Shown piece by piece: positions 549 to 58,150 of a DNA stretch of 64,000 bases. Within the stretch, counting starts at the first letter, position 1, and every line of letters begins with the position of its first letter. The translations under genes were made by a program, and so were the position numbers. Under the pieces are notes generated by a model. It saw only the letters and a program-made list of their open reading frames with translations, did not search any database and was not told where the DNA came from. The stretch lies in IMG/VR virus record IMGVR_UViG_3300021520_000002, positions 221,573 to 285,572 of that record; one strand, given 5' to 3'.

Positions 549-580
549 ATCGGCAAGATCTATTGCTAAATCTTGCCGAT
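549..580. repeat. dispersed palindromic hairpin, copy 1
   Basis: ATCGGCAAGATCT-ATTGCT-AAATCTTGCCGAT just after the RNAP beta stop codon. Confidence 0.95.
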
Positions 581-584
581 ATTA

Positions 585-2555
585 TTATTCTTTCAGAAAT
601 TGTAATTGAACATCTACCACTTCTTTTGTTCTACTTTTAACGGCGCGATCTTCTGGAAGATGATATTCTCCAGATGTTATGAGTTGTTTTATCAAATCTG
701 GTTTACCTTCTTTCCAATCACTCTTAACGGATAAAAATTCTTTAATTGCCTGATCTGTGCCGTTAGTTATCATACTTTCAATTTCCATTTGACCAATTTT
801 AGAACCACCACCCTTTGATCTACCTTTTAATGGTTGTTGGGTAATAGCTTTAACAGTTCCAAGATCTCTTGCATTCATAATTTTTGAAGCTATTTTATAT
901 AATTTTTGAATATACATTGGAGCACAAAATATATTCTTTAAAGTAAAATCTTCATTTAATAATCCAATATCTAATTTAAGATTCTGTTTCATATATTTAA
1001 TAAGTTGTTTCTTTAATAAAACATTTTCTCTATAAGGTATTGATGTTTTTAATAAATCTTTTATATTTATCTCTGCAAAACATGGGGCTTCAACAAATAA
1101 ATTAGATTCAGTAACATTATTAATAAAATTATGTTTAAATATATCATCAGTTTCAAGATTCTTTATAATATCATTTTCAATTTTATTATAATAATCTTTA
1201 TCTATATGTCTAATAACTGAATCATTTAACCACTTAATTAATTCAGTTGTTTTTTCCGGAGTTTCTCTAATATGTTTATCACAATACATTACAGATTTAC
1301 CAACAATTCCTTCTAGAATTTGACCTAGATTCATTCTTGAGAAAACTGCAAAAGGATTGAAAATTAAATCCAATGGAATGTTTGAATCAACGGCAATAGG
1401 TCTTAAATCATCAGGAAGAATTAAACTAACTACACCTTTGTTTGCATATCTATTTGCTAATTTATCACCATAATAAGTTGATTCTTGTTTTGAAATTTCT
1501 ATTTCCATAATATAACAAACTTCATCTAATTTGATATTTCCTCTTGAACCTTTCTTTTGAGAAAATCTATAATACTTATCCAATATATGTGTTGCATAAT
1601 CACCTACTGTTTTTCTAGCAAGATCTTGCACAACATCTACTATGAATAAAGCATATTTTTTATAAAGACCTTTTATTATATTATGAAGATTAGTATCTAT
1701 AAGATTTATTTCTCTATCTGGTTTTAATCTATGTATTCTTATTCCAGTTACTGTACCATTTTCAACTTTAGATTTTATCTTATTGGTTGAAAATTTAGTA
1801 CCTTCAAGACTATTTAATGTTAATAAATGTGAAATAGACATCGTTTTAAGTGCTTGTTGAACTTTATTTTTGGTTGCCTGAGCATTACCAATATAACTAT
1901 CTGCTCCTTTAGGTATTAATAAACTACAAACTGCATCGTCTTTAATTTTTTGGCCGATATTTGGAAAATACGTAAAAGAATTTGGAATATGATCATACAT
2001 TGTTTTCATTAATGTATATTCATAGATTGGAATATAAATTTTATCAGTAAATACTGCTTTAGCTTTATCGGCAAAAGATTCAGAAATAACTATTGAATCT
2101 TCATGGTTAAAACCAAAAAATAACATAAATCCTGTAAATGTATTATAACCATATGAAGGTACACCATTTTTAAAACAATCATATGAAGCTATAATATCTC
2201 CTTTCTTAAATTTATCTCCTTCATCCAAACTATATCTTAATGTTGTTCCATAAATACTATACACTCTTTTAACTGCTGGAGTATGTATTTCTTCAAGTCT
2301 ATCTAAATTATCATATTTAACAATTAATAAATCATTATTATTGTTTTTATATTTTACTGAACCATCATCTTTAGCAATATTAATTCCTAAAATAGAATTA
2401 TCTCTAACATGTCTGTAATCAGAACCCACAACATATGGAATATCTGTATTAGGACTTGTTAAAGCTTGTTGTACCTGTTTAGATATCATACTTGCTCTTG
2501 TTGCGTCTGTTGAAGATAAAAATGGTATACTATTTAGATTAATACTTGTGATCAT
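585..2555 (-). CDS. phage multisubunit RNA polymerase, beta-like subunit, C-terminal part
   Basis: RpoB motifs GFNHEDSIVIS, GDKLANRYANKGVVS, NPFAVFSRMNLGQ, TQQPLKGRSKGGGSKIGQME. Confidence 0.92.
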   Translation of the reverse strand: MITSINLNSIPFLSSTDATRASMISKQVQQALTSPNTDIPYVVGSDYRHVRDNSILGINIAKDDGSVKYKNNNNDLLIVKYDNLDRLEEIHTPAVKRVYSIYGTTLRYSLDEGDKFKKGDIIASYDCFKNGVPSYGYNTFTGFMLFFGFNHEDSIVISESFADKAKAVFTDKIYIPIYEYTLMKTMYDHIPNSFTYFPNIGQKIKDDAVCSLLIPKGADSYIGNAQATKNKVQQALKTMSISHLLTLNSLEGTKFSTNKIKSKVENGTVTGIRIHRLKPDREINLIDTNLHNIIKGLYKKYALFIVDVVQDLARKTVGDYATHILDKYYRFSQKKGSRGNIKLDEVCYIMEIEISKQESTYYGDKLANRYANKGVVSLILPDDLRPIAVDSNIPLDLIFNPFAVFSRMNLGQILEGIVGKSVMYCDKHIRETPEKTTELIKWLNDSVIRHIDKDYYNKIENDIIKNLETDDIFKHNFINNVTESNLFVEAPCFAEINIKDLLKTSIPYRENVLLKKQLIKYMKQNLKLDIGLLNEDFTLKNIFCAPMYIQKLYKIASKIMNARDLGTVKAITQQPLKGRSKGGGSKIGQMEIESMITNGTDQAIKEFLSVKSDWKEGKPDLIKQLITSGEYHLPEDRAVKSRTKEVVDVQLQFLKE

Positions 2556-2599
2556 ATTTTACGCCTCCTCTTATATTTTGAATAAAAAATTTTATTACC

Positions 2600-2630
2600 A
2601 TATTATTTCTATATGAATAAGTTAAAAATT
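2600..2630 (-). promoter_or_regulatory. putative phage promoter (TTCATATAGAAATAATA on coding strand), representative copy
   Basis: same motif recurs about 22 times in intergenic DNA, oriented with the downstream gene. Confidence 0.75.
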
Positions 2631-2634
2631 CAAT

Positions 2635-3075
2635 TCAATTTATAAGAGATTTTTTAATTTCTGGAATCTGAAAAGCATCTCCTGGAATCTGAAAAACAAA
2701 TTCAGCATTTGATTTTTCTTTTGGTTGCCAAAACAATACAATCTTTTTCTCTTTTTCTTCTTCCACCCAAAATGAAAACTGATTAACATATTTAGCTGGT
2801 GACATCATAACCATCATAGGCATTACAGTATTGAATGTGTTACTTATAAATTCAAATAATTTTTCATGAATAGACATAATACATTCAGCTGAGAATGTAA
2901 TATCATCTAAATCAAGTTCATGGATTTTATCAACATCAGCATGAATAATCTTACTTAGATGATTTTTGGTTTCTTCTACCTTTTTTTCATAATCTAAATT
3001 ATAACTAAACATATTAGTTTTCCCCAATAGTTTTTTAGTTCTATTTTTTACTCGATTTTTTAAAGATTGTATCAT
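2635..3075 (-). CDS. hypothetical protein
   Basis: 146-aa ORF, ATGA overlap with upstream gene, SD GGAGGTG. Confidence 0.7.
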   Translation of the reverse strand: MIQSLKNRVKNRTKKLLGKTNMFSYNLDYEKKVEETKNHLSKIIHADVDKIHELDLDDITFSAECIMSIHEKLFEFISNTFNTVMPMMVMMSPAKYVNQFSFWVEEEKEKKIVLFWQPKEKSNAEFVFQIPGDAFQIPEIKKSLIN

Positions 3076-3506
3076 CCCACCTCCCTGTTTGGTTCTTCAT
3101 CAGGTTTTTCAAATGGATAAACAATCCATCTATCATTAGGACATTCTTCAACATAATATGTTGGTTTTACAATAGATCTTGGTTTATAATGAATTGTTGC
3201 AACATCAAATTGTTGTATAAAAGAATCAAGAGTGACACCAGTGTCCGATAAATCATCTACTATTAATATATCATTAATTATTTCTCTATCATTTGTTCTT
3301 AAATATACAGTATATCTGACTGCAAAATCATGTTTATCTAAAATTTCAAGTTCTAAATAATGACTTAAATAAACTCCAACAATTAAGCCACCTCTTGGAA
3401 TTGCATAAATATATTCATATTTACCTTTTGGAATTTTATTAGCTAATATTATAATACTATCATGAAACTCTTGTGGTGTTACAAAGTATTTGTTCCATTC
3501 ACTCAT
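3072..3506 (-). CDS. type I phosphoribosyltransferase (xanthine/guanine PRT-like)
   Basis: IPRGG loop, PRPP-binding ILIVDDLSDTGVT, C-terminal WIVYPFE. Confidence 0.88.
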   Translation of the reverse strand: MSEWNKYFVTPQEFHDSIIILANKIPKGKYEYIYAIPRGGLIVGVYLSHYLELEILDKHDFAVRYTVYLRTNDREIINDILIVDDLSDTGVTLDSFIQQFDVATIHYKPRSIVKPTYYVEECPNDRWIVYPFEKPDEEPNREVG

Positions 3507-3657
3507 TTATTTCTCCATTATTTAATTTTTTGTTCAAAAAACATTTCAAGAATAGTAAGAGTTAATACCATTAGGTCATTTTCATTAGCTATTATTGGAA
3601 ATAAAGATTCTTCCTTATAAGCTGTGATTGGTGATATTTTGAATATTTTTTGATGAA

Positions 3658-3855
3658 TCATTTAGTATCTCCTTCCCAGTTCAAAGCATCATATTTGCCG
3701 ATAAACACATTCCATGTAATTTTTAATGTTCTCCACCAATGATTTAATCCATAATATGGTAAAGGCCTTGCTGGTATCCATCTTCCATCTTTAACTTCTT
3801 GATCTGTAGACCATTGTTTTATTTCAACTGCGGAATATGTATTTGGGTGTCTCAT
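3658..3855 (-). CDS. hypothetical protein
   Basis: 65-aa ORF, SD AAGGAG, WIPARP motif. Confidence 0.65.
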   Translation of the reverse strand: MRHPNTYSAVEIKQWSTDQEVKDGRWIPARPLPYYGLNHWWRTLKITWNVFIGKYDALNWEGDTK

Positions 3856-3993
3856 TCTTGTTCTCCTTAATATTTCTCTTTATAAACTATAAACATTAAA
3901 ATATAATCTTCTTGATTTAAAAATTTAACATCTATAACATCTAATTTTTTTAACCATGGATTAATATCTAATTCTTGACCATTAATTTCAAGT

Positions 3994-4179
3994 CTAACTG
4001 TTTTTAGTTGTACTATCATTTTTTTCCCATCTTTTTAAACAGTCTATTACAGTAAGTTCTGGGACAATAACGTTTGAATATGATCCATTTGTAGCACTAA
4101 CTGCAACTCTAATTGTTGCCCATTTAGCTATTCCTTTTGGTAATTTCCAAGCAATCCATTTTTGAATTTTATCTTTCAT
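3994..4179 (-). CDS. hypothetical protein
   Basis: 61-aa ORF with SD, TAG stop. Confidence 0.6.
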   Translation of the reverse strand: MKDKIQKWIAWKLPKGIAKWATIRVAVSATNGSYSNVIVPELTVIDCLKRWEKNDSTTKNS

Positions 4180-4478
4180 ATTATTTCTCCTTTTTTAACT
4201 TCTATTGACATAAGACCAGCTTCTTGTAATATCTTTTTGCATTTTGGAATTACCATAATTTTTTGAAGAGCATTTGCAATATTTTCAAGATTTGTTTTAT
4301 TATCTAAATTAAAAGTCATTGTACTTCCATCTTTAGCATAAAAAATTATATTACGTGGAATAGCACCACCTATTCTAAGAATTTCACAGCATGATTCTTT
4401 TTTTGCTAAATCAATACCGATAGGTGTATATTTTTCAATCATTTCATCAAAGCCATCTTTTTCAGTTTCTTTTTCCAT
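4176..4478 (-). CDS. hypothetical protein
   Basis: start moved to ATG after AAGGA; longer annotated start runs into the palindrome. Confidence 0.6.
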   Translation of the reverse strand: MEKETEKDGFDEMIEKYTPIGIDLAKKESCCEILRIGGAIPRNIIFYAKDGSTMTFNLDNKTNLENIANALQKIMVIPKCKKILQEAGLMSIEVKKGEII

Positions 4479-4503
4479 ATTTTTTCCTTTAAATAAAAAT
4501 TTT

Positions 4504-4535
4504 ATCGGCAAGATCTATTTCTAGATCCTGCCGAT
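4504..4535. repeat. dispersed palindromic hairpin, copy 2
   Basis: ATCGGCAAGATCT-ATTTCT-AGATCCTGCCGAT. Confidence 0.92.
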
Positions 4536-4539
4536 TTTC

Positions 4540-5373
4540 TTAGTCCAGAAAGGCAACAGCTCTGGAAGCTTTCGCTTCCTGTTCTCTGTTCAAACGAACA
4601 GAGTACCATCCTTTCAAATTGATTGTCTTATGATCACTATGGCGAATATAGCCACGAACATAAACCTGTGCATCCCGAGTCATCTGTCTCCATCCTAGTT
4701 TATCCTTATCTGAACTATATTGATCATGAAACTCTTTCAGAGTAAGACCATTAGGAGCATAACTTCTATGAACCATCACAGTTGTTCCACCAGTGCGATA
4801 CAACTCCTCACAGATATGAGGTTTTGCACCTCTTCTTCCGTTGGTAATCGGCTCATTTTTGTGAATAAGTTTCGGATTTGGATCAATATTAGCCTTGGTG
4901 AAAAACCATTCACCCTGTCTAATATAGACCTCATTTTTGCGCCGAGTTCCAGCATGTTCCAGATGTTTTTTCTTCAGAGTTCCTTTCTGAGCATTAACTA
5001 CAGACTCAGGTTTAAGTGCTTCCATAGCATCAAGAACATTTTTCGCTCCAGCTGCTTCCGGTACAGCACAAGTAAACCACTGTCTCTCATCATGTCCGCA
5101 GAGAAATTTGGAAACGGTTTCTTTTCCAACTTTTCCTTGTTTCAGCATAAGGAGCAAATGACGTTCTGCCACTTTTGCATCGATCACAGCTACTTCGAAA
5201 GGAGTATTAGTTTGACGTTCGGAAATAGCAAAAAATTCTCCTTTTCGATCTTTTAACACATCAATACTGATTGCGAGATTTGGAGGCATTCCATCACGAA
5301 AACGTGTTGTTTCTACAAATTTAACTCTCGCGCCGATCTCTTCGAATTTTGTCTTTATTAATTCTACGTTCAT
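4540..5373 (-). CDS. hypothetical protein (RQGEWFF motif)
   Basis: SD AGGAGG then ATG 5373; own promoter motif at 5422; higher GC than flanks. Confidence 0.8.
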   Translation of the reverse strand: MNVELIKTKFEEIGARVKFVETTRFRDGMPPNLAISIDVLKDRKGEFFAISERQTNTPFEVAVIDAKVAERHLLLMLKQGKVGKETVSKFLCGHDERQWFTCAVPEAAGAKNVLDAMEALKPESVVNAQKGTLKKKHLEHAGTRRKNEVYIRQGEWFFTKANIDPNPKLIHKNEPITNGRRGAKPHICEELYRTGGTTVMVHRSYAPNGLTLKEFHDQYSSDKDKLGWRQMTRDAQVYVRGYIRHSDHKTINLKGWYSVRLNREQEAKASRAVAFLD

Positions 5374-5983
5374 TATTCCTCCTAAAAGAAATTGTAGATT
5401 TTTCATTCTACATAAGTATTATTTCTATATAAAGAGTTTGAATATGAAATTATTTTTTTGGGGTTTTTATTAATTTAGTTAAATATGTATCTTGACAGTC
5501 ATCACATCTAATATAAGGTTTTTCAATTTCTTTTCCACAACGACATTTATTAGTTTGTGATTCTTTTTGATCTCCAAAAACTGTGTCATAATTTACATTA
5601 TTATCCATTTAAATGATCTCCCTTAATGGTTGGAAAACTTTTATCAATCTATAAAAATCACTTTTTCTAATTCTTACTTTTTTACCTTCTGTAGAAAATA
5701 TTATATAATCTTCATCAAGATCTTCATAAATTTCCATCACTCCATAATCATATTCTTCAAATTGACTTTCTATTTGTTTTTCTATATCTATGGTAATTTT
5801 TATCATATTTCTCCTTTTTCTTTTTCATTATATTTACAACATGTAGAATCTTCACCTGATTGATAATGTCCATCAAATATACATTTTTCATTATCATCTA
5901 ATTTACAAAGAACTTTTCCACATTTTTCACATATCATTTTTCTCTGACAGATATTACAATCTTTATTCATGTTATTACCTTCC

Positions 5984-6310
5984 TTATTGATAGGAATGTA
6001 AACCTTTTCCAAGTTTAGAAAGTAGTCGATTTTTTGGATCGACATGTTTGTTTTGATTATTAAACATCTGTGGTTCTTTAAATATAATTGGAAAAGGTTT
6101 CAGAACTTCTTGTTTAACTAATTTTTGTTCTTCTATATATGTTTTAAAAGTCATTGGTTTAATTTTAATTGCTGGGGTAACATGGTTAGTTGACTCTTCA
6201 TAATAAAAACAATCATCAGACGGTGAATGTGCTGTTGATGTTATTGGTGTTTGATCTGCTAAAGTTGTCCAAGTACCAGTGCTATTATATCTATTATAAT
6301 AAGATACCAT
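5984..6310 (-). CDS. hypothetical protein
   Basis: 108-aa ORF, SD GAGGT. Confidence 0.6.
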   Translation of the reverse strand: MVSYYNRYNSTGTWTTLADQTPITSTAHSPSDDCFYYEESTNHVTPAIKIKPMTFKTYIEEQKLVKQEVLKPFPIIFKEPQMFNNQNKHVDPKNRLLSKLGKGLHSYQ

Positions 6311-6321
6311 ATTTAACCTCT

Positions 6322-7095
6322 TTATTTTTCATCAAAACATTCCAATCTTTTTAAAGCTGAATCACTACAAGAATTTAAAGATTTAACAATATCAAAATAT
6401 TGAGAATATATATGAAGACCATCTGAATATGCTATCATTTCTCCATCTTGTAATCTTATATCAGATCCTTCATCTTCTAATCCAGAATTGACCATTGCTA
6501 AAACATATTCTTTTACTCTTTGAAATCCCCAAAGATTCTCTGGCATACCACAAACAAGATCCCAAGAACGAAAGAAAACTGATGATCTTAATATTCCATC
6601 AACAGCTTTAAAAGACATAACTCTCAAACAAGGTGGATCACTCATTTTTGTACAAGTATTATCACCAACATTAATAGTAGCTTGATTTGTTTTTCCTTTA
6701 GAAATTATTAGATTTTGTATAATATCTTCAACTTGTGGTTTAATCCATGTTGAATATTTATAAATTTCATTTGGTTCTAATTTATCATCCATTAGATATT
6801 TTGCAAAATAAGCATCAACAGCCTCTAAATCAGTTGGTCTGAAAGGAGAAGTTTCAGATGTGAATGGTTCCCAAATTGAAGGTGTTTTAATTTTTATCAA
6901 AACATATGGTAATTGTAATCTAAATTGTCCTATATAACTCCCAAATTCATCAACTTTTGAAGCGTTTCCAACTTTATATTTTATACTGTTTTTACTTTCA
7001 AGACACAACCACATTACACTTCTCCAAGCTTGAGCAATAGTAAATTCTTCTACATAATTAGTTTCCCAATTAATCATTCTTTTCTCCATTTTCAT
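6322..7095 (-). CDS. thyA: thymidylate synthase family protein
   Basis: catalytic DPPCLR, FRSWDL, PENL (Asn, dUMP-type), LHIY. Confidence 0.8.
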   Translation of the reverse strand: MKMEKRMINWETNYVEEFTIAQAWRSVMWLCLESKNSIKYKVGNASKVDEFGSYIGQFRLQLPYVLIKIKTPSIWEPFTSETSPFRPTDLEAVDAYFAKYLMDDKLEPNEIYKYSTWIKPQVEDIIQNLIISKGKTNQATINVGDNTCTKMSDPPCLRVMSFKAVDGILRSSVFFRSWDLVCGMPENLWGFQRVKEYVLAMVNSGLEDEGSDIRLQDGEMIAYSDGLHIYSQYFDIVKSLNSCSDSALKRLECFDEK

Positions 7096-7366: not shown

Positions 7367-7388
7367 TTCTACTCCTTTGATTAATTAA

Positions 7389-7457: not shown

Positions 7458-7463
7458 GATTCA

Positions 7464-8596: not shown

Positions 8597-8611
8597 TTTA
8601 TCTCCTTCTTA

Positions 8612-50540: not shown

Positions 50541-50568
50541 ATATTTAAAGAATTAAATGGAGGAAGGT

Positions 50569-53500
50569 ATGGCAGATCAAGCAACTCCAATTCAAGAACG
50601 ATATATTGATCCTTATATGCAAAGAATTTTTGATTATGACACTACAGATTCGAGAGTATTTATATCACGGGTAACAAATCTATTACTTAAATCTGTTGGG
50701 AATAATATTGTTTTATTCGGACTCGAGCCAATAAATTTAAGACCCACTATTTCAGATCCACCATCATCAATCATATCTGTAGATATCACTTCAGGATTAG
50801 CTATACAAGATTATGTACTTTGTGATAATTTATCTGGAGTTGGGATTGAACCTAATATAACTTTAACTATGGATGTTGCAGGATTAGATGATACAACTGT
50901 TGGTGGTGCATATCTTGGAATTTGGATAAATTATCAATTTTTAGAATCAATGGAATCTAATCCTTTTATTTTAAAAATGTATCATGTAAATTCTGATGGT
51001 TCTGGGGTGAATCCAGCTGGATTTGATCCATTAAAAAATTGTACATTAGTTGCAATTTTAGGTTTTACAAAAATAGGTGGTGTTGTTACTGACGTGTGGA
51101 GTTTACCAGCAGTAGTTGATTATCAACATTGGCCTACTTTATTAGTTGGTTCAACAACTTATTATTTAAGAGGTTGGGAAAATTCAAATCTTAATACTAA
51201 TGAAATTATAAGATATGTATGTGGTGAAGAAGGATATGTTAAAGGTCCAGATATAGTAGTTGATGGAAGTATAGCTTTATTCGATGGAACAACAGGTCAA
51301 ATTATTAAAGACAGTGGGTTAACTCCAGTTTTTGGAGATGTATATGGACCAACAGGTTCTACAACAGGACATATTGCTATATTTGATGATAACACTGGTA
51401 AATTATTAGCTGATGGTGGATTAGTACCAGATGGAGATGTGATCGGTCCTAGTTCATCTGTTACTGGAAATTTAGCTATTTTTGGAGATACATCAGGAAA
51501 GTTAATTTCAGATGGTGGTTCAATACCAACTGGAGATGTAGTTGGTCCAATGGGATCAGTTGCAGGACACTTGGCAGTATTTGATGATGTAACAGGTAAA
51601 GTAATTTCAGATGGTGGACCAGTTCCAGTTAGTGTTGGAGATGTGGTTGGACCAGTAGGTGGAGCAGATGATAGTCATTTAGTTTTATTTGATGGATTAA
51701 CTGGAAAATTGATTAAAGATGGTGGTCCAGTTCCATCTGGTTTAGGAGATGTTATTGGTCCTACAGGTTGTACTCCAGGAAATTTAGCTGTATTTAATGA
51801 TGCGACTGGTAAGATATTAGCTGATGGTGGATCATTACCTATTTTTGGTGATGTTGTTGGTCCTGCATCATCTAGTGATGGTAATTTAGTTTTATTTGAT
51901 GGAATATCTGGTAAATTAGTTAAAGATGGTGGTGCAATGCCAATTGGAGATGTAGTTGGACCAGCGGCAGCAACCCCAGGAAATTTAGCTGTATTTAGTG
52001 ATATAACTGGTAAAGTATTAGTTGATGGTGGAGCATTACCAGTTAGTCTTGGAGATGTGGTTGGACCTGGTGTGGCTATTAGTGATCATATTGTTTTATT
52101 TAGTGGAACAACTGGTAAACTAATAAAAGATGGTGGAGCACTACCAGCTGGTTTAGGAGATGTAGTTGGACCAGCAACTGCTATATCAGGACATTTAGCT
52201 GTATTTAGTGGAACAACTGGTAAATTAATAGTTGATGGTGGGGCTGTACCATCTGGTTTAACTAGACTTATACCAGATCAATCTGCTGGTGTTCTTCCTG
52301 CAAGTACTGTTCGAGGAACTGATGGACTTTATTATCGTTGTAGGGTCGCACATTCAGCTCTTGCCGCTAATCGGCCGATAACTGGTGCTGCATTAGATAC
52401 AATAACTCTTAAACCTGAATGGAAAAAGTATTGGGATGTTGATTCATCTCTTACAACAGCTCCAACTTGGGTTTCTGGAACATATTATGTAACAAATATG
52501 GATTCAATTTTTGATTTAACTACTGGAAATACTTTTATTCATTTAAAGAAATATGGTGCAACTATTGATCCATATAATACTTTCTGTTCAACATTTTATG
52601 ATGGTTCAGATGATATACATACTAAGTTAGTTGTTGGTGATATAAATATTCTGGGAACTAATAGAAGTTATAATTATACATTTATTCATCTTGGTCCACA
52701 TTCAAATAAAGATAATGTTGAAGATGTTTATAAAGGTGACACAGGATTAATGGTTTGGAATCATCCTGATCCAACAAAATTAGAAGATTGGTTTCGTTGG
52801 TATCAGAGTGGTATAATAGTTGAAAATCAAAATTATACAACAGTACAATATCACCAAAATTTTGGTTTACAAGCTTGGTCTACAGAAGCTGGTCAGTCTG
52901 AAGTTAAAGGAACTGATAATAATGAAACTGGTTATAGATGTATTTTAACACATGTTGCTGCAACAAATAATAGACCAACTACTGGTACATATTGGGCAAC
53001 ATATTGGGAAGTTGGTGGTGGGTGTGGTCAAAATCAGTGGGTTTCAGGAACAACATATCAAGCTAAAGGAACTGCTCGTGGAGATTCTTATGGTGTTTAT
53101 GGTATGGCCGCTGGTTATGGTACAGAAGGAAATTATACAGGTGTATTAGGTGATTCTTGGTATCTTGGTGGTTCATATGCATATCCAAAAGGTGTATATA
53201 CTGCTCCTGAAGTAAATGGTTGGAATGCTAATAGAATGGCCATAGGTGTTGCTGGTAGAACTAGAATTTATCAAGATGGTTGGGAAGCTCATGATGGAAC
53301 AGTTCCAGTAACTACAGGTTCTATGTATGCATTTTACGCTCACGCCGCTATTGGTGGACAATATAAATATTCTTTTTATGGTAAAGATCAACTTTATATA
53401 GAAAAAACTTATGAAGCGGTTTATCCACAGAATTCAGCAATATATAGTGTTTATCAATCAAACTTTTCAGCTTCATCAGAAAATTCAAGTATATCAGGAT

Positions 53501-54879
53501 TTATATCAAATAATCCTTCTGAAGTGTTTGTTAATGATGGTGATAGGTATGGTAATGTTGGTGGAACTTTTACATGGATAAGACGTACATTATCTGTTTT
53601 TGCACAGACAGGTTCATATCCAACTAGTTATATTAATGCAGCGGCAAGCGCGTCTAATCAATATGCTGAACTTCCAGTATTAAGCGCTCCAATGCAAACT
53701 GGACATACTTATAAAATATTAGTTGATGTTGCTAGTATAGTATCAACATGGACTATAAGATCTTTTGATGGTACACAAACTATTGGAACAATATCAGCAA
53801 ATGGAAGTTTTCGATTTGATTGGACATGTTTAAGTACAAATTCAGTTATTGGTTTAGATATAATGAGAGAAGGAAAAGGAGAATATGGGGCTGGAGGTAC
53901 ATTATCTGCTAGTGGAGGTGGAGGTTCTGGTTTTACTGGAACTTATACTGTGTCTGGTGGTAATATTTCATCTGTCACAATAACAAATTCTGGATCTGGT
54001 TATACTTCTATACCAACTATTGTATTATCTGGTGGTGGTAGTGCAGTAATAACTGCTAGAGTTTCACCAGGTGGATTTCGTATAGTATCTGGTTCAAGTT
54101 CATCTCGAGCTCAATTTTCTAATTTTTCTAGTAAAGAAGTTGTTACAGCAGTATCAACATCAGTAATGTCTGGTGTTAAAGGTTCTGTTACAGATGGTGT
54201 TGATAATTCACATCATATGGTTGGAGTAAAAGGTAGTTGTATTTCTATAGCTGAAAATTATCCATCTTTACAATTACAAGGTGTTTATGGTAATACTCAG
54301 TGGAGTGGATCAACAACAGTTTTAGGAAGTGATGGTATTACTGTTTATAGATGTAAATTATCTCATGTATCAGCAACAATTAATAGACCATATTCTGGAG
54401 CAAATTGGGCAACATATTGGGAAACAGAAACTACTCCAGGAACAGGTGCTGTTGCATGGGTATTAGGTAGAAGATATGTTGTTTATGGTCCTGCTTTAGT
54501 TACAGGTATTCAAGCATCTACAAAAGTTTATCAAGTTGATGGAGCAACAGCTAATAGTTCTTATCGTAGCTGTAATATTGCAGCTGCATTTTATGCTGAA
54601 CCATGTATTGGTGGATCGGCAAAATATTCACTTGTTGGTTATGATCCTATAAAAATATATGATTATGAAGGTTATCCAGCTGGAACACAATCGGTATCAA
54701 TAACTGGTAAACGTGTAGCTCCTGCAGCAGCTGTGGTAGGGAGTGTAGTAGGTACTGGACCTGGTCAAAATGCTGGATGGATTAAAGCTGTTATTACACC
54801 AGGAGATGGACCAGCACCAGGTGTTGCCGTTAATGGGTGGATACCATATTGGACAACTGTTTCTCCCACTGGACCTTAA
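50569..54879 (+). CDS. tail-fibre protein, paralog of 42976 gene
   Basis: MADQxTPxQERYIDPYMQRIFD N-terminus; ten GDVxGP...FDGxTGKLIxDGG repeats; CBM-like modules; GWIPYW end. Confidence 0.75.
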   Translation: MADQATPIQERYIDPYMQRIFDYDTTDSRVFISRVTNLLLKSVGNNIVLFGLEPINLRPTISDPPSSIISVDITSGLAIQDYVLCDNLSGVGIEPNITLTMDVAGLDDTTVGGAYLGIWINYQFLESMESNPFILKMYHVNSDGSGVNPAGFDPLKNCTLVAILGFTKIGGVVTDVWSLPAVVDYQHWPTLLVGSTTYYLRGWENSNLNTNEIIRYVCGEEGYVKGPDIVVDGSIALFDGTTGQIIKDSGLTPVFGDVYGPTGSTTGHIAIFDDNTGKLLADGGLVPDGDVIGPSSSVTGNLAIFGDTSGKLISDGGSIPTGDVVGPMGSVAGHLAVFDDVTGKVISDGGPVPVSVGDVVGPVGGADDSHLVLFDGLTGKLIKDGGPVPSGLGDVIGPTGCTPGNLAVFNDATGKILADGGSLPIFGDVVGPASSSDGNLVLFDGISGKLVKDGGAMPIGDVVGPAAATPGNLAVFSDITGKVLVDGGALPVSLGDVVGPGVAISDHIVLFSGTTGKLIKDGGALPAGLGDVVGPATAISGHLAVFSGTTGKLIVDGGAVPSGLTRLIPDQSAGVLPASTVRGTDGLYYRCRVAHSALAANRPITGAALDTITLKPEWKKYWDVDSSLTTAPTWVSGTYYVTNMDSIFDLTTGNTFIHLKKYGATIDPYNTFCSTFYDGSDDIHTKLVVGDINILGTNRSYNYTFIHLGPHSNKDNVEDVYKGDTGLMVWNHPDPTKLEDWFRWYQSGIIVENQNYTTVQYHQNFGLQAWSTEAGQSEVKGTDNNETGYRCILTHVAATNNRPTTGTYWATYWEVGGGCGQNQWVSGTTYQAKGTARGDSYGVYGMAAGYGTEGNYTGVLGDSWYLGGSYAYPKGVYTAPEVNGWNANRMAIGVAGRTRIYQDGWEAHDGTVPVTTGSMYAFYAHAAIGGQYKYSFYGKDQLYIEKTYEAVYPQNSAIYSVYQSNFSASSENSSISGFISNNPSEVFVNDGDRYGNVGGTFTWIRRTLSVFAQTGSYPTSYINAAASASNQYAELPVLSAPMQTGHTYKILVDVASIVSTWTIRSFDGTQTIGTISANGSFRFDWTCLSTNSVIGLDIMREGKGEYGAGGTLSASGGGGSGFTGTYTVSGGNISSVTITNSGSGYTSIPTIVLSGGGSAVITARVSPGGFRIVSGSSSSRAQFSNFSSKEVVTAVSTSVMSGVKGSVTDGVDNSHHMVGVKGSCISIAENYPSLQLQGVYGNTQWSGSTTVLGSDGITVYRCKLSHVSATINRPYSGANWATYWETETTPGTGAVAWVLGRRYVVYGPALVTGIQASTKVYQVDGATANSSYRSCNIAAAFYAEPCIGGSAKYSLVGYDPIKIYDYEGYPAGTQSVSITGKRVAPAAAVVGSVVGTGPGQNAGWIKAVITPGDGPAPGVAVNGWIPYWTTVSPTGP
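51235..52245 (+). repeat. ten tandem ~33-35-aa GDVVGP fibre repeats
   Basis: visible in translation. Confidence 0.85.
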
Positions 54880-54897
54880 TTGAAAGGAGAAAGTATT

Positions 54898-55038
54898 ATG
54901 GCCGATGAAAAAATTAAACAAGAAAATCCTTCTGATTTAATAAAAAAACATAAAGAATTAGAAGATAGATTAAAAGCTGGATTAAAGAAAAATGATCAAT
55001 TTATTGTTGATTATAAAAAACAAGTAAAAAAGTTGTAA
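54898..55038 (+). CDS. 46-aa hypothetical protein (not in ORF track)
   Basis: SD AAGGAG; MADEKIKQENPSDLIKKHKELEDRLKAGLKKNDQFIVDYKKQVKKL. Confidence 0.6.
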   Translation: MADEKIKQENPSDLIKKHKELEDRLKAGLKKNDQFIVDYKKQVKKL

Positions 55039-55060
55039 ATAGAAAAGGAGAAACAGACAA

Positions 55061-55537
55061 ATGGCTACAATTAAAATCTTTGAATTAGAACAAGCAAAAA
55101 ATAGTGTAGAGACTCTTAAGACTTATAAATTAAATACAACACAATGGTATTGGTTGGGTAGAATTTCTCAATTTCTCAACAATGAAATCACCGCTTTTGA
55201 CGAAGCAAATATGGAATTATATAAAAAATATGGACAATATATTGAAGTTGAATCTTATTTATTTACTACACAAAATCTTAATATATTTATTGATCATATT
55301 AGGAGTGATGTGAACAAGATAAATGAGTTAGAAAAGTATGCAAAGAAACATATTGGAAATAATATTTATATAACTCCAGAGAATATGAAAGATTTTAATA
55401 AAGAACAGAAACAATTATTTGAACAAGACATTCAAATACCAATTAAACCTTTAAAAATATCTATTCTTGAAGGAATAGAGGGTCTTACAGGTGTCTCAAG
55501 TTCACTGATGGTGTTTTTTGAAGAGCCATCCGATTAA
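55061..55537 (+). CDS. DUF1617-like protein, single domain
   Basis: YWLGRI..ELYKKYG..ENMKDFNKE..LFEQDIQI. Confidence 0.55.
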   Translation: MATIKIFELEQAKNSVETLKTYKLNTTQWYWLGRISQFLNNEITAFDEANMELYKKYGQYIEVESYLFTTQNLNIFIDHIRSDVNKINELEKYAKKHIGNNIYITPENMKDFNKEQKQLFEQDIQIPIKPLKISILEGIEGLTGVSSSLMVFFEEPSD

Positions 55538-55551
55538 TTAAATATATTTTA

Positions 55552-55579
55552 TTGGAGGAGAATTAAACCTCTCCTCCAA
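55552..55579 (+). terminator. hairpin/terminator
   Basis: TTGGAGGAG/CTCCTCCAA followed by T-rich tract. Confidence 0.55.
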
Positions 55580-55602
55580 CTATTTTTAAATGGAGGAAAT
55601 TT

Positions 55603-58107
55603 ATGAACACTCCACCTGCTGGTGATGATTATAAAAAATTATTACAATATTTTAGTTCTTTAAAAGTATCAGCTCAAGATCAACCAGATTTAACAGTTAA
55701 AGTTTCTGGTGGTATATTTACTAAACAAACATCTAATGGTCTTGAATATATTAATTGTGTTGGTGGAATTTCCCCATCAGTGTCAACACCTGGGCATGGT
55801 AAATCACAAGTTGTTGTTATTACATTAGATGAATCTGGGAATATTGCATTAGTATATGGAATTGAAGAAGTTAGTGATAATCCATCTTTTCCAAACATTT
55901 CAGTACTAAGACTTCCTTTAGCATTTGTGGTTATAAAATCTAGTACTATAAGAATAACTGATGAAATGATTTATGATGTAAGATCTATTTTTAATTCAAG
56001 TCATATTCATAAAAGTTTAACAGATACTAGTGATTTTAATTGTCATCCTATTGATGCAATTACAGGTTTAACTCAAGCACTTATAGACATTCATGGCACA
56101 AGTGGAACTTCAGGTTCATCTGGAAGATCAGGTTCTTCTGGAACAAGTGGAAGATCTGGTTCTTCAGGCACATCTGGAAGTTCTGGTACAAGTGGTTCTT
56201 CAGGTACTTCAGCTTCAAGTGGAACATCAGGTCGTTCTGGTAGTAGTGGAACAAGTGGTTCAAGTGGGACAACAGGTTCTTCTGGAAGTTCTGGAACATC
56301 AGGTTCTTCAGGAAGATCTGGTTCTTCGGGTTCATCTGGTCTTTCTGGAACATCAGGTAGTTCTGGAACAAGTGGAAGATCTGGTTCTTCAGGTACATCT
56401 GGTAGTTCAGGATCGTCAGGAAGTGCAGGAACATCAGGTTCATCTTCTACATCTGGTACATCTGGTAGTTCAGGTTCATCTGGGTCAAGTGGTTCATCAG
56501 GAACAAGTGCTTCATCTGGAACATCAGGTTCTTCTGGAAGTTCAGGTACATCTGGGTCAAGTGGTACAAGTGGTTCATCAGGAAGTTCTGGTTCATCAGG
56601 TTCTTCTGGTAGTTCTGGTACTTCAGGATCATCAGGTACTTCAGGTTCTTCAGGTAGTTCAGGTTCAAGTGGAACATCACCTCCTGGATTCACATCTGGA
56701 ACAGATGGAACAAGTGGTTCAGATGGTACTTCAGGTAGTTCTGGAACAAGTGGGTCTTCAGGATCATCAGGTAGTTCAGGTTCAAGTGGTACATCACCTC
56801 CTGGATTTACATCTGGAACAGATGGAACTTCTGGAACATCTGGAAGTTCTGGTACAAGTGGTTCTTCAGGTCCTCCTGGAACATCAGGTTCTCCTGGAAC
56901 ATCAGGTAGTTCTGGTCCTGCTGGAACATCAGGTAGTTCTGGAACATCTGGTGCTGGTGGTGGTCTTTCAACAATTTGGATTGGTCAAGGAACTGGAACA
57001 TCAGGTGTTAAAATTTCAACAGCGGGAACACTTGGAACAGATGCAGATTCATATTTACATGTTTATAGAACAACTGCTCATCCAGCATATTCAGGAGTTT
57101 CTCGTGGTTGTATTCATGGTGAGTGGACAGCTAATCTTATTGCAGATTCAATTCCATCAGCTGTTAGAGGTTATATTAAAAACAATTCTAATAATACTGG
57201 TAATACAACATATGGACATATGATAGGTTCTTTTGGTTGGGTTGAAGATACTGCAAATGGTGATATTTACGGTCTTGGTGTTGAAGGAAGAGTTGATGCT
57301 GCTGGAAAAGCAATGATGTATAATGGTTTTGAAAGTCAGGTTACTTGGACTGGGGCATCTGGATCATTTGGTAATAATGGAGTTATTGGAGCACAAGGTG
57401 CTTATGGATTTCATGGTATAGTAGCAATACATAATAGTGGTGGAAATGCTATTGCTCCTGGTGGAAATGGTTTAGTATCATTAATTAGACTTGAAAAAGC
57501 AGATTGTTTAGCTAATCCATATGGAGTAGGTCCATATAGTTTTTGGGCAGTTAGTGGTACACCTGCTGGTGCTGCAGCCGCAGCCGCAGATCCAATGAGA
57601 TTAGATTGTAGTAATGGAACTATGGGAATTTTAATTGGCGCTGAATCAACAACACCATATATAAATCTTAGTAATGGAAGTAGTAATGCTTTAGGTGCAA
57701 GTGGATATGGTATAAGATATAGTGCTGGTGTAGTACAACTTAGAAATAGTGGTGGTTCTTGGGCAAATATAACATCAAGTTCTGATATTAATCTTAAAGA
57801 AAATATCACACCAATATCTAGTCAAATAGATGTTTTTGAAGCAGCAAAATCTATCAATGGTGTCTATTTTGATTGGAGAAAAGATATTGAATTTGCACAA
57901 GGTTATGGTGATAAAAGAACGATGGGTGTTTTAGCTCAAGAAGTTGAAAAAGTTTTGCCAGAACTTGTTAGTGAAATAGGTAATGGATATAAGTCTTTTA
58001 ATTATGATGGTTTAACAGCCTTTTTGTTAGAAGTTAATAAGAGACTTATTGATGAGTTAGAAGATTTAAGAACAGAAGTGAATTTGTTAAAGGACAAAAT
58101 AAAATAA
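55603..58107 (+). CDS. tail fibre with Gly-Ser/Thr triplet shaft and C-terminal peptidase S74 intramolecular chaperone
   Basis: Gly every third residue 56095-56964; SSDINLKENI..GVYFDW..GVLAQEVEKVLPELV..coiled coil. Confidence 0.85.
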   Translation: MNTPPAGDDYKKLLQYFSSLKVSAQDQPDLTVKVSGGIFTKQTSNGLEYINCVGGISPSVSTPGHGKSQVVVITLDESGNIALVYGIEEVSDNPSFPNISVLRLPLAFVVIKSSTIRITDEMIYDVRSIFNSSHIHKSLTDTSDFNCHPIDAITGLTQALIDIHGTSGTSGSSGRSGSSGTSGRSGSSGTSGSSGTSGSSGTSASSGTSGRSGSSGTSGSSGTTGSSGSSGTSGSSGRSGSSGSSGLSGTSGSSGTSGRSGSSGTSGSSGSSGSAGTSGSSSTSGTSGSSGSSGSSGSSGTSASSGTSGSSGSSGTSGSSGTSGSSGSSGSSGSSGSSGTSGSSGTSGSSGSSGSSGTSPPGFTSGTDGTSGSDGTSGSSGTSGSSGSSGSSGSSGTSPPGFTSGTDGTSGTSGSSGTSGSSGPPGTSGSPGTSGSSGPAGTSGSSGTSGAGGGLSTIWIGQGTGTSGVKISTAGTLGTDADSYLHVYRTTAHPAYSGVSRGCIHGEWTANLIADSIPSAVRGYIKNNSNNTGNTTYGHMIGSFGWVEDTANGDIYGLGVEGRVDAAGKAMMYNGFESQVTWTGASGSFGNNGVIGAQGAYGFHGIVAIHNSGGNAIAPGGNGLVSLIRLEKADCLANPYGVGPYSFWAVSGTPAGAAAAAADPMRLDCSNGTMGILIGAESTTPYINLSNGSSNALGASGYGIRYSAGVVQLRNSGGSWANITSSSDINLKENITPISSQIDVFEAAKSINGVYFDWRKDIEFAQGYGDKRTMGVLAQEVEKVLPELVSEIGNGYKSFNYDGLTAFLLEVNKRLIDELEDLRTEVNLLKDKIK

Positions 58108-58116
58108 AAACATTTT

Positions 58117-58150
58117 ATCGGCAAGATCTTGTAATATAGATCTTGCCGAT
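58117..58150. repeat. dispersed palindromic hairpin, copy 10
   Basis: ATCGGCAAGATCT-TGTAATAT-AGATCTTGCCGAT after fibre stop. Confidence 0.95.

What the first reader, a model, noticed from the sequence alone, without database searches (positions are those of the whole stretch)
549..58150. Dispersed REP-like palindrome family ATCGGCAAGATCT-N6/8-AGATCTTGCCGAT
Seen: ten intergenic copies (549, 4504, 13876, 15449, 38133, 40004, 40858 degenerate, 42094, 49688, 58117), arms conserved and loops variable, mostly within about 12 nt of a stop codon, including after two of the three RNAP genes and two fibre genes. Unlike the ordinary terminators here they share primary sequence and lack consistent U-tracts. 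Inference: sites for a sequence-specific protein (genome organisation, processing, packaging or recombination) or a phage-RNAP-specific terminator.
Basis: partly seen in the sequence, partly recalled or inferred. Interest (0 to 1): 0.72.

Follow-up and report, generated by a model that had tools for sequence, protein, structure and literature searches.

The report
Phage terminator hairpins built from a genome-wide word
An uncultivated freshwater jumbo phage ends many of its genes with one shared RNA hairpin, and each hairpin arm is a copy of a short DNA word that also occurs about 260 more times inside its genes, much like the uptake-sequence pairs that serve as terminators in Neisseria and Haemophilus.

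Summary
All ten palindromes are at the stated coordinates, and none is expected by chance. The 285.6-kb phage genome holds about 30 copies.

Each copy lies 4-39 nt after a stop codon, and about half of the phage's strong gene-end hairpins belong to this family.

Evidence that they act as RNA:
- Flanking stem pairs covary.
- G-U wobbles and GNRA tetraloops lie on the transcribed strand.
- One copy sits between convergent genes.
- An unrelated hairpin replaces one orthologue in a relative.
- In four lake metatranscriptomes, coverage falls two- to four-fold at the copy after the major head gene.

I read them as terminator/attenuator and 3'-end hairpins. This resembles the conserved terminators of phiKZ. 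They are not REP elements: there is no RAYT gene and no GTAG-type flank.

A new result explains the shared sequence. The base of each arm is an instance of the word A-N-CGGCA(A). This word occurs 262 further times singly, 95% of them inside genes, in all six frames and on both strands. Synonymous-codon shuffles yield 5-10 times fewer copies.

Relatives that carry the hairpin keep the word's density but not its positions. One more distant relative lacks both word and hairpin. What reads the word is unknown.

The parts
549..580 (-). Family hairpin, 4 nt after the stop of the RNAP beta piece (585-2555). GCAA tetraloop and a U-G wobble on the transcribed strand. Followed by the ribosome-binding site of the next gene.
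   Evidence: dG -22.6, z -7.6
4504..4535 (-). Family hairpin, 4 nt after the stop of ORF 4540-5406. GAAA tetraloop. G-U on the transcribed strand, which would be an A-C mismatch on the other strand.
13876..13908 (-). Family hairpin with a bulged A in the 3' arm, 39 nt after the stop of ORF 13948-14307. A promoter-like motif (13925-13933) lies between the stop and the hairpin.
15449..15480 (-). Family hairpin, 7 nt after the stop of the RNAP beta' piece (15488-17476). GCAA tetraloop, no U-tract, directly followed by AAAAAGGAG and a start codon.
   Evidence: dG -21.6, z -8.1
38133..38164 (-). Family hairpin, 4 nt after the stop of the 57-aa ORF 38169-38342. Followed by a T-tract and the promoter-like motif at 38096-38104.
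40004..40036 (-). Family hairpin with perfect arms, 6 nt after the stop of ORF 40043-40285. Followed by AAAAAGGAG and a start codon.
40858..40889 (-). Degenerate family copy with 4 arm mismatches, 4 nt after the stop of ORF 40894-41106. Folds weakly.
   Evidence: dG -7, z -2.2
42094..42125 (-). Family hairpin, 6 nt after the stop of ORF 42132-42614. Followed by a T-tract and the promoter-like motif at 42057-42065.
49688..49719 (+). Family hairpin with perfect arms, 10 nt after the stop of the 2233-aa CBM5/12 protein. Its loop is in the minority orientation (UUUC on the sense strand). Followed by UAUUUUAAAAG.
58117..58150 (+). Family hairpin with perfect arms, 9 nt after the stop of the collagen/S74-chaperone tail fibre gene (55603-58107).
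38096..38104 (-). Core TATAGAAAT of the promoter-like motif TTTCATATAGAAATAATATA. About 60 copies genome-wide, mostly before genes of the minus-strand block. Together with the upstream hairpin and T-tract it forms a terminator-promoter cassette.
42057..42065 (-). Same promoter-like motif, downstream of hairpin 42094 and its T-tract.
758..59313 (.). 46 single (unpaired) copies of the word A-N-CGGCA in the window, almost all inside genes. Start positions with strand: 758-, 1389+, 2067+, 3696-, 8085+, 8267-, 10980-, 11577-, 11653+, 12558+, 13174+, 17051+, 18134-, 21499+, 22189-, 24039-, 24130+, 24666+, 25545-, 26183-, 26222+, 27305+, 28227-, 30032-, 30159+, 30461+, 31304+, 31715-, 34464+, 34811+, 35307+, 36486+, 36600+, 37225-, 38621+, 40883-, 44191+, 45609+, 47043-, 47182+, 51963+, 52362-, 53640+, 54615+, 54825-, 59307-.
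   Evidence: Enrichment statistics.

Best explanation
The palindromes are RNA hairpins at the 3' ends of genes of a jumbo phage that carries its own split multisubunit RNA polymerases.

Each is a 13-16-bp stem, often capped by a GNRA tetraloop on the sense strand, starting a few nucleotides after a stop codon. I infer that the hairpin ends or attenuates transcription and leaves a stable 3' end. Where a T-tract and the phage promoter motif follow, it closes an operon. Where a ribosome-binding site follows directly, it lowers expression of the next gene and protects the upstream message.

The shared primary sequence is not needed for that job. It exists because each arm carries the clade's over-represented DNA word (T)A-N-CGGCA(A). 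The hairpins are inverted pairs of a word that some other sequence-specific, DNA-level process keeps at about one copy per kilobase on both strands. This is the way DUS/USS pairs double as terminators in Neisseria and Haemophilus.

Shown: the anatomy, position, covariation, strand asymmetries, one coverage drop in RNA, and the word statistics. Inferred: termination versus processing, and whatever reads the word.
For: Position:
- 30 copies, all intergenic, with a median of 6 nt between stop codon and stem. This is the same context as the 30 unrelated strong gene-end hairpins, judged by T content, promoter downstream in 5/25 versus 9/30, and a ribosome-binding site within 60 nt in 14/25 versus 13/30.
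- One copy lies between convergent genes.
- The preceding genes include the major head, tail sheath, fibre and RNAP genes.

Structure:
- z-scores of -7 to -9.
- Across 59 distinct clade copies, the pairs flanking the core covary. Eleven pairs show double changes, and the covariation score is 0.216 against 0.124 in shuffles (0/500 as high) and at most 0.087 for slid registers.
- Compensated core variants exist: CGGCGAG/CTCGCCG, CGGTAAG/CTTACCG and CAACAAG/CTTGTTG.

RNA strand:
- 23 G-U pairs on the sense strand against 13 on the antisense.
- GNRA loops on the sense strand in 13 copies against 3 on the antisense in this genome, and the sense fold is the more stable in 92 of 142 clade copies.

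Function:
- In four metatranscriptomes, contigs covering the major head gene stop within or 15 nt before the hairpin. Depth falls from 12 to 3-7, from 9.9 to 0-4, and from 7.9 to 0-3, and a neighbouring opposite-strand gene is silent.
- DNA-run contigs cross the same site.
- The orthologous site in relative G004 holds an unrelated 14-bp hairpin.
- Five of the top terminator-like sites in a 16-kb scan are family copies.

Word:
- With hairpins masked, ATCGGCAA occurs 100 times (1.8 expected), TATCGGCAA 70 times (0.56) and ANCGGCA 262 times.
- 72% of all CGGC/GCCG tetramers lie in the word.
- 95% of single copies are in coding sequence. Sense to antisense is 122:128, and all six frames are used.
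- Codon shuffles give 12 sense and 26 antisense copies against 125 and 136 observed.
- The same enrichment is seen in hairpin-bearing relatives, and neither word nor hairpin in a 46%-identity relative.

Precedents: conserved terminators in phiKZ and 201phi2-1 (PMC10914365, PMC11512511) and DUS pairs acting as terminators (PMC2397512).
Against: - RNA evidence exists for one site only. It comes from assembled contigs of small libraries, not raw 3' ends, and it cannot separate termination from processing or differential decay.
- Only about a third of copies carry a canonical U-tract.
- Outside this genome the loops occur in both orientations about equally, so the loop argument is lineage-specific.
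- Many copies share descent or gene conversion, so the counts of G-U pairs and loops are not independent.
- A conserved mid-stem with a variable loop is more typical of recognition as duplex or hairpin DNA than as RNA.
- No reader of the word was found.
Confidence: 0.6

Rival explanations
1. The element works as DNA. A sequence-specific protein binds or cuts the word A-N-CGGCA(A) for genome organisation, self-recognition, packaging, modification, nicking or recombination. Inverted pairs gather at gene ends only because two copies are tolerated there, and any effect on RNA is secondary. This rival overlaps the best explanation for the word and differs only on what the pairs are for.
For: - 262 single copies lie inside genes on both strands, 5-10 times over codon-shuffled expectation.
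- Density is kept while positions turn over.
- The conservation pattern is a fixed duplex core with covarying flanks and a free loop.
- The arm sequence persists in a relative whose RNAP beta is only 59% identical, chosen without reference to the hairpin.
Against: - Sense-strand GNRA loops, the G-U excess, and greater sense-strand stability.
- Loop length and arm spacing vary, which a rigid dimer on duplex DNA would not tolerate.
- RNA coverage drops at the hairpin.
- An unrelated hairpin replaces one orthologue.
- No candidate protein was found. The HU-like ORF is unresolved.
Confidence: 0.2
2. The word mimics a host recognition motif, either a Chi-like signal for RecBCD/AddAB or another polar host motif. 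The phage loads it on both strands to escape degradation of its DNA ends, and the hairpins are by-products, pairs co-opted as terminators.
For: - Lambdoid phages that lack recombinases strongly over-represent host Chi (PMC3784561).
- Bacterial contigs of the MAG bin that also holds a related 256-kb phage contig carry the complement of the word in excess on the sense strand only. CGGCA antisense is 126 against 47.6 +/- 6.4 shuffled, while sense is 40 against 36.9.
- That MAG holds ATCGGCAA 444 times against 38 for the reversed word.
Against: - The host link rests on metagenomic binning alone.
- Relatives of that MAG show a milder 2-5-fold excess that codon or codon-pair usage could explain.
- The top over-represented words of the bacterial contigs are different ones.
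- The phage uses strong Shine-Dalgarno sites, which is odd for a Bacteroidota host (own knowledge).
- The word shows little polarity in the phage, 116:146.
Confidence: 0.15
3. PeSL-like mobile regulatory cassettes. The shared hairpin, with its T-tract and promoter in some copies, is kept alike because it serves as a homology patch for recombination that shuffles gene modules such as tail fibres.
For: - Hairpin plus T-tract plus promoter-motif cassettes recur in this genome and across the clade.
- Tandem fibre paralogues are each preceded by a hairpin plus a conserved ribosome-binding site and N-terminus.
- Loops are alike within a genome but differ between genomes at orthologous sites, which suggests gene conversion.
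- PeSLs are documented in T4-type phages (PMC2839356, PMC4122927).
Against: - Most copies sit at orthologous, stable positions after core structural genes.
- Only 5 of 25 copies are followed by the promoter motif.
- It does not explain the 262 single words inside genes.
- No indel bounded by two copies was demonstrated.
Confidence: 0.1
4. RNA processing sites. A host or phage endoribonuclease, RNase III-like or Cas6-like, cuts polycistronic transcripts at the shared hairpin, as at the T7 RNase III sites.
For: - Intergenic placement between co-transcribed genes without a U-tract.
- A coverage step at one site.
- The shared sequence would suit a specific nuclease.
Against: - No RNase III, dsRBD or Cas6 family is detected in the phage genome.
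- A perfect stem of 13-16 bp is shorter than typical RNase III substrates and lacks their internal loop (own knowledge).
- Unrelated hairpins occupy equivalent sites.
Confidence: 0.07
5. REP/RAYT-type or other transposase-driven miniature mobile element.
For: A dispersed, intergenic, palindromic family of about 30 copies.
Against: - No Y1/HUH transposase in a genome estimated 95% complete.
- No conserved GTAG-like flank; flanks are A/T-rich and covary as part of the stem.
- Copies are conserved at orthologous sites.
- No target-site duplications were seen in the flanks.
Confidence: 0.02

Closest known systems
DNA uptake sequences (DUS of Neisseria, USS of Pasteurellaceae) occurring as inverted pairs that act as Rho-independent terminators (PMC2397512)
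   Same: A short non-palindromic word at about one copy per kb. It lies mostly inside genes, in several frames and on both strands. A minority of copies (here 18%) form close inverted pairs just after genes and make terminator-like hairpins. Word density is conserved more than word positions.
   Different: This is a virus, not a competent bacterium, and no uptake machinery or receptor is implied. The word differs and has one free position (A-N-CGGCA). Its function is unknown. In the pairs the arm extends beyond the word by a conserved AGATCT.
Conserved terminator motif of the giant phages phiKZ (61 mapped terminators) and 201phi2-1 (motif A, n=59) (PMC10914365, PMC11512511)
   Same: A jumbo phage with its own multisubunit RNA polymerases, in which a large share of gene-end hairpins have one stem sequence. 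[quoted passage not shown]
   Different: The sequence differs: phiKZ has a C/G-run stem followed by TTAT. Here U-tracts are inconsistent. The 3' ends are not mapped here, apart from one coverage step. No genome-wide single-copy word has been reported for phiKZ in those papers.
PeSL promoter-early/stem-loop cassettes of T4-type phages (PMC2839356, PMC4122927)
   Same: Repeated intergenic stem-loops with terminator activity, combined with a repeated promoter. Such cassettes are possible substrates for recombination between gene modules.
   Different: Only a minority of the copies here carry the promoter motif, and that motif is not sigma-70-like. The copies sit after conserved core genes as well as variable ones. 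Shuffling was not demonstrated.
Chi over-representation in lambdoid phages that lack their own recombinases (PMC3784561)
   Same: A phage genome strongly enriched in a short word that a DNA-processing enzyme may read. The enrichment goes beyond what coding requires.
   Different: In lambdoids Chi is polar and concentrated between the origin and the packaging site. Here the word is nearly symmetric and evenly spread, and neither the host nor its Chi is known.
REP elements and their RAYT transposases
   Same: A dispersed extragenic palindrome family, positioned to stabilise upstream mRNA.
   Different: No RAYT gene, no GTAG-type flank, no doublets or BIME arrangement, and the copies are phage-borne.
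Stoperators of mycobacteriophage L5 (own knowledge; Brown et al. 1997)
   Same: About 30 copies of one 13-bp sequence in short intergenic gaps of a phage genome, where they affect transcript elongation.
   Different: Stoperators are asymmetric duplex sites bound by the repressor and are oriented with transcription. They are not hairpins and are not part of a coding-region word.

Membership tests
Intrinsic (Rho-independent) terminator | Stable G+C-containing stem-loop shortly after a stop codon | tested here: met
   dG of -18 to -25 kcal/mol, z of -7 to -9. Median of 6 nt from stop codon to stem.
Intrinsic (Rho-independent) terminator | U-tract directly after the stem | tested here: inconclusive
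   At least 5 T in the first 8 nt in about a third of copies. Others are followed by an A-rich spacer and a ribosome-binding site. The unrelated hairpins of this phage behave the same way.
Intrinsic (Rho-independent) terminator | Transcripts end at the site | tested here: inconclusive
   One site only. Four metatranscriptomes show contig ends and a 2-4-fold depth drop at the hairpin after the major head gene, while DNA contigs cross it. RNA contigs were not available for other genes.
phiKZ-type conserved phage terminator | Phage encodes its own multisubunit RNA polymerase | tested here: met
   Split beta and beta' pieces, with AR9/PBS1/phiKZ-type PHROG families.
phiKZ-type conserved phage terminator | Many gene-end hairpins share one stem sequence | tested here: met
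   25-29 of about 55-60 strong gene-end hairpins in G000, and 30-50% in relatives.
phiKZ-type conserved phage terminator | Motif BCCYCCCC-loop-GGGRRGG followed by TTAT | tested here: not met
   The stem here is TATCGGCAAGATCT/AGATCTTGCCGATA, with no conserved TTAT. The phiKZ motif is as printed in PMC10914365.
DUS/USS-type word with terminator pairs | Word far over-represented genome-wide, in genes, on both strands and in several frames | tested here: met
   ANCGGCA occurs 262 times singly. Codon shuffles give 12 sense and 26 antisense against 125 and 136 observed. All six frames are used.
DUS/USS-type word with terminator pairs | A fraction of copies form close inverted pairs after genes | tested here: met
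   29 pairs, which is 18% of 319 copies.
DUS/USS-type word with terminator pairs | Word is the signal for DNA uptake by a competent cell | not testable with these tools
   Nothing suggests uptake. The resemblance is architectural only.
REP/RAYT (REPtron) | Cognate Y1 HUH transposase (RAYT) in the genome | tested here: not met
   PF01797 gave no match at E <= 1 in a record estimated 95% complete, while control genomes did match.
REP/RAYT (REPtron) | Conserved GT[AG]G-type tetranucleotide beside the palindrome | tested here: not met
   Flanks are A/T-rich and covary as extra stem pairs.
PeSL cassette (T4-type phages) | Stem-loop physically combined with a repeated early promoter | tested here: inconclusive
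   5 of 25 family copies and 9 of 30 unrelated hairpins are followed within 90 nt by the TATAGAAAT motif. Promoter activity was not tested.
PeSL cassette (T4-type phages) | Copies bound indels or replacements between close relatives | tested here: inconclusive
   Several copies have orthology on one side only in G002, but those flanks are fast-evolving fibre genes. Six copies are stably orthologous.
T7-type RNase III processing site | Long irregular hairpin with an internal loop, cleaved by RNase III | tested here: not met
   Perfect stems of 13-16 bp. No phage RNase III or dsRBD. Cleavage itself is not testable here.
Rfam RNA families | Match to a curated covariance model | tested here: not met
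   Only a tRNA (10485-10556) reaches a gathering score in the window.

The most novel reading that the evidence does not exclude
A clade of uncultivated jumbo phages maintains its own 'signature word', A-N-CGGCA(A), at more than one copy per kb on both strands. It does so through selection on density or a molecular drive, because a phage or host DNA-processing machine reads the word. Candidates are self/non-self discrimination, protection of DNA ends, priming, modification or packaging. The phage's dominant terminator family arose by pairing that word. This would be the first uptake-sequence-like or Chi-like architecture that belongs to a virus lineage rather than a cell.
Probability: 0.35. 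Interest if true: 0.8.

Novelty: new variant of a known kind. Interest (0 to 1): 0.6.

Why it matters
If the hairpins are terminators, they provide a ready map of transcription-unit ends for a clade of jumbo phages that nobody has cultured. They would also be a second, independent case, after the phiKZ-like phages, of giant phages with private RNA polymerases using one stereotyped terminator.

The larger point is the word. A 7-8-mer kept at about one copy per kb inside genes, on both strands, with positions turning over while density is held, means that something reads phage DNA sequence-specifically on a genome-wide scale. The candidates are an end-protection signal, a priming or modification site, or a self-recognition tag.

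Because it is clade-specific, the word could also be tried as a signature for recognising these phages in metagenomes. Whether it can link them to hosts depends on the untested host-motif idea.

Tried and rejected
- Contig ends as evidence for RNA 3' ends. Four Logan contigs all stop 38 nt after the tail-sheath stop, inside the hairpin. That copy shares exact 31-mers with two other copies, and at least two of the runs are apparently DNA, since they cross the head-gene hairpin. I treat it as a de Bruijn-graph artefact. Only the head-gene copy, whose 31-mers are unique, was used.
- RNA contigs for other hairpin-preceding genes: none were long enough to be indexed.
- Candidate reader or nuclease families in the phage genome. 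Y1/RAYT, RNase III, dsRBD, Cas6, ProQ/FinO, cold-shock domain and NusG gave no match.
- HU-like ORF 19818-20276. No Pfam, PHROG or PDB-sequence hit at the usual thresholds, and a sub-threshold Bac_DNA_binding match at E = 0.012. Only 3 homologues were found, and the AF2 model has pLDDT 44. It was therefore not taken to fold search or complex prediction.
- Hairpin-promoter reading (N4-like). Rejected because the distance to the upstream stop is tight while the distance to the next start varies, one copy lies between convergent genes, and RNA depth falls rather than rises downstream.
- Restriction- or Dam-site reading of AGATCT/GATC. AGATCT is neither enriched nor avoided outside the hairpins (138 observed, 137 expected), and covarying variants destroy the site.
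- Single words as hidden half-hairpins: only 3 further close inverted pairs exist.
- Single words as conserved functional sites: they are not positionally conserved.
- Regular, Okazaki-like spacing of the word: the CV is 0.96, indistinguishable from random placement.
- Strong polarity of the word: 116 on the plus strand against 146 on the minus strand, and sense to antisense 122:128.
- The search for related loci with a single RNAP beta protein found nothing. Relatives were reached through pattern scans and exact-protein look-ups instead.
- megablast of the window against deposited phage genomes: no match.

Full report
CONTEXT. The window is the last 64 kb of a single-contig virus record of 285,572 bp with 29% G+C. 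CheckV estimates the record to be 95% complete. It was assembled from lake and freshwater metagenomes. It encodes split beta and beta' RNA polymerase pieces of the AR9/PBS1/phiKZ type, a major head protein, a tail sheath and collagen-like fibres. It has no close relative among deposited phage genomes. It is therefore an uncultivated jumbo phage with its own transcription machinery.

The full pattern matches three times exactly, against zero in 100 shuffles. Seven more copies with 1-4 arm mismatches sit at the other stated coordinates. Genome-wide there are 30 copies, all intergenic. Read in the direction of transcription, every window copy starts 4-10 nt after a stop codon, except 13876 at 39 nt. 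Copy 38133 follows a 57-aa ORF that my first gene call had missed. Copies fold at -18 to -25 kcal/mol with z-scores of -7 to -9, while the degenerate copy at 40858 folds at only -7.

THEY BEHAVE LIKE THE PHAGE'S OTHER GENE-END HAIRPINS. A scan of the 75 nt after every called gene found 55 single strong hairpins (dG <= -14). Of these, 25 belong to the family and 30 have unrelated stems. The two classes are alike in several respects:
- Distance from the stop codon: median 6 nt for the family, 10 nt for the others.
- T content downstream: 5.5 versus 6.3 T in 12 nt.
- Promoter-like motif TATAGAAAT within 90 nt: 5/25 versus 9/30.
- Ribosome-binding site and start codon within 60 nt: 14/25 versus 13/30.

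One family copy lies between convergent genes (genome coordinate 45508). Family copies follow the major head, tail sheath, tape-measure-like, fibre, helicase, QueD, QueE and two RNAP genes. In a 16-kb scan, terminator-like sites are three-fold over expectation, and the five best are family copies.

EVIDENCE FOR ACTION AS RNA. I aligned 59 distinct copies from this genome and its relatives, each oriented by the gene it follows. The stem pairs outside the searched core covary. Eleven pairs show double changes, the covariation score is 0.216 against 0.124 in shuffles (0/500 as high), and slid registers reach at most 0.087. Rare core variants are compensated: CGGCGAG/CTCGCCG, CGGTAAG/CTTACCG and CAACAAG/CTTGTTG. 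One-sided changes give G-U on the sense strand more often than on the antisense strand, 23 against 13, and 8 against 1 within the core positions. In this genome the hairpins close as 14-bp stems with GAAA or GCAA tetraloops on the sense strand in 13 copies, against 3 on the antisense. Across 142 clade copies the sense fold is the more stable in 92. These counts are not independent events, and in other lineages the 6-nt loops occur in both orientations.

DIRECT RNA EVIDENCE, ONE SITE. Four metatranscriptome runs from two samples of one study hold the major head gene. Laid on 5.9 kb around it, their contigs end 15 nt before the hairpin or inside it (L157 3043, 3043, 3075 and 3098; the hairpin is 3074-3107). 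Depth falls from 12 to 3-7, from 12.4 to 3-6, from 9.9 to 0-4, and from 7.9 to 0-3. The opposite-strand gene beyond position 5320 is not covered at all, which argues against DNA carry-over. DNA-run contigs cross this hairpin, and its 31-mers are unique in the genome. This fits termination, attenuation or a protected 3' end, with read-through. It does not tell them apart.

COMPARATIVE DATA.
- Pattern scans found the same hairpin in four IMG/VR contigs at 68-77% nucleotide identity. They also found it in low-G+C contigs of several MAG bins, including a 256-kb contig, and in many metagenome contigs from lakes, digesters and activated sludge.
- At six orthologous sites the arms persist where the flanks are 12-32% diverged. 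There is one compensated ATC/GAT to ACC/GGT change between orthologues. At one site relative G004 carries an unrelated 14-bp hairpin instead.
- Unrelated hairpins keep their sequence only in the closest relative and are replaced at about 70% identity.
- A relative chosen by protein alone (RNAP beta 59% identical) has two family copies in 18.7 kb. One at 46% identity has none in 22 kb and uses ordinary G+C-rich, U-tailed terminators.
- Loops are alike within a genome and differ between genomes at orthologous sites, which points to gene conversion or duplication. Tandem fibre paralogues have clearly carried their hairpins with them.

WHY THE SEQUENCE IS SHARED: THE WORD. Half-sites outside the hairpins turned out to be far too common. 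With the 30 hairpins masked, the counts are as follows:

| Word | Observed | Expected (order-2 Markov) |
|---|---|---|
| GGCAAGATCT | 13 | 0.6 (order-3 simulation) |
| CGGCAAGAT | 28 | 0.3 |
| ATCGGCAA | 100 | 1.8 |
| TATCGGCAA | 70 | 0.56 |
| AGCGGCA | 68 | 2.2 |

TATCGGCAA, CGGCAAGAT and ATCGGCAAG are the top-ranked 9-mers of the masked genome. The general form is A-N-CGGCA(A), with N = T 129, G 68, C 36 and A 29. There are 262 single copies, and 72% of all CGGC/GCCG tetramers in the genome lie inside the word.

The single copies have these properties:
- 95% are in coding sequence, in all six frames.
- Sense to antisense is 122:128, and plus strand to minus strand is 116:146.
- They are evenly spread, with random-like spacing (CV 0.96).
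- Only three further close inverted pairs exist.
- Shuffling synonymous codons within genes gives 11.9 +/- 3.3 sense and 26.1 +/- 4.3 antisense copies, against 125 and 136 observed.

Counting arms, there are 319 copies (1.12 per kb), of which 18% lie in 29 inverted pairs. The enrichment recurs in every hairpin-bearing relative and is absent from the 46%-identity relative. Positions are not conserved: 31% are kept in the closest relative against 27% for any 7-mer, and 0-4% against 10% in the others. So density is maintained while individual sites turn over. [quoted passage not shown] Here it is found in a virus.

WHAT READS THE WORD IS UNKNOWN. No RAYT, RNase III, dsRBD, Cas6, ProQ, cold-shock or NusG family is detectable.

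One lead is worth noting. The bacterial contigs of the MAG bin that holds the related 256-kb phage contig carry the complement of the word in excess over codon shuffles, on the sense strand only. This recalls host Chi enrichment in phages (PMC3784561). The lead is weak for three reasons:
- The host link rests on binning alone.
- Relatives of that MAG show a milder excess.
- Codon-pair effects were not excluded.

COMPARISON WITH KNOWN SYSTEMS. As gene-end hairpins sharing one stem in a giant phage with private polymerases, these resemble the conserved terminators mapped in phiKZ and 201phi2-1 (PMC10914365, PMC11512511), but with a different sequence and no constant tail. The hairpin/T-tract/promoter arrangement of some copies resembles PeSLs (PMC2839356). 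REP/RAYT membership fails on two defining features. No Rfam family matches.

VERDICT. My best reading, at confidence 0.6, is terminator/attenuator and 3'-end hairpins assembled from inverted pairs of a clade-specific over-represented DNA word. I class it as a new variant of known kinds and score its interest at 0.6, chiefly because of the word.

Noticed in passing
window 38096-38104, 42057-42065, 13925-13933 (minus strand); about 60 copies between genome coordinates 108,000 and 264,000: A strongly conserved promoter-like motif, T-rich tract then TTTCATATAGAAATAATATA. It lies upstream of genes of the minus-strand block, often right after a terminator hairpin, and also occurs in related contigs. 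It is probably the promoter class of one of the phage RNA polymerases.
   Followed up: partly
window 11861-12652 (FolE2). Outside the window: G000 170928-171356 (QueD) and 201476-202324 (QueE).: Genes for 7-deazaguanine (preQ0-type) synthesis, so the phage DNA is probably base-modified. I did not look for a DpdA-type transglycosylase.
   Followed up: no
window 7464-8387 (minus strand): A DHH/DHHA1 phosphoesterase (RecJ/NrnA-like; its Pfam scores fall just below the curated cut-offs). It is a possible nano-RNase or exonuclease encoded by the phage.
   Followed up: no
window 10485-10556 (minus strand): One tRNA gene, the only Rfam match in the window.
   Followed up: no
relative G002 69450-70778 versus G000 96708-96718: The major head gene of the close relative carries about 1.3 kb that G000 lacks. 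It may be an intron, intein or homing-endonuclease insertion.
   Followed up: no
G000 30,000-39,600 and window 55,600-64,000: Collagen-like repeat DNA in tandem tail-fibre paralogues. It cross-hybridises between the two ends of the record and accounts for the high G+C of the window's last 8 kb. Strains differ in one fibre gene's length (532 versus 550 aa).
   Followed up: partly
G000 106262-106295 and other copies that share 31-mers: Public de Bruijn-graph contigs break exactly at hairpin copies that share 31-mers with other copies. This mimics transcript ends and is a trap for anyone reading contig ends as biology.
   Followed up: yes
L318 8153-9343 (relative whose RNAP beta is 59% identical): An IS605-type OrfB/TnpB (Cas12f-like) gene inside a related jumbo-phage contig. 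No Y1 TnpA gene lies beside it.
   Followed up: no
G000 45545-46885 (minus strand): An HNH endonuclease gene converges on a small plus-strand gene, with a family hairpin as the shared, apparently bidirectional terminator. The arrangement is conserved in G002.
   Followed up: partly
window 19818-20276 (minus strand) and G000 200503-200616: Two ORFs with sub-threshold matches (E about 0.01) to the HU/IHF family profile. Only three homologues exist in the 5.8-billion-protein collection.
   Followed up: partly
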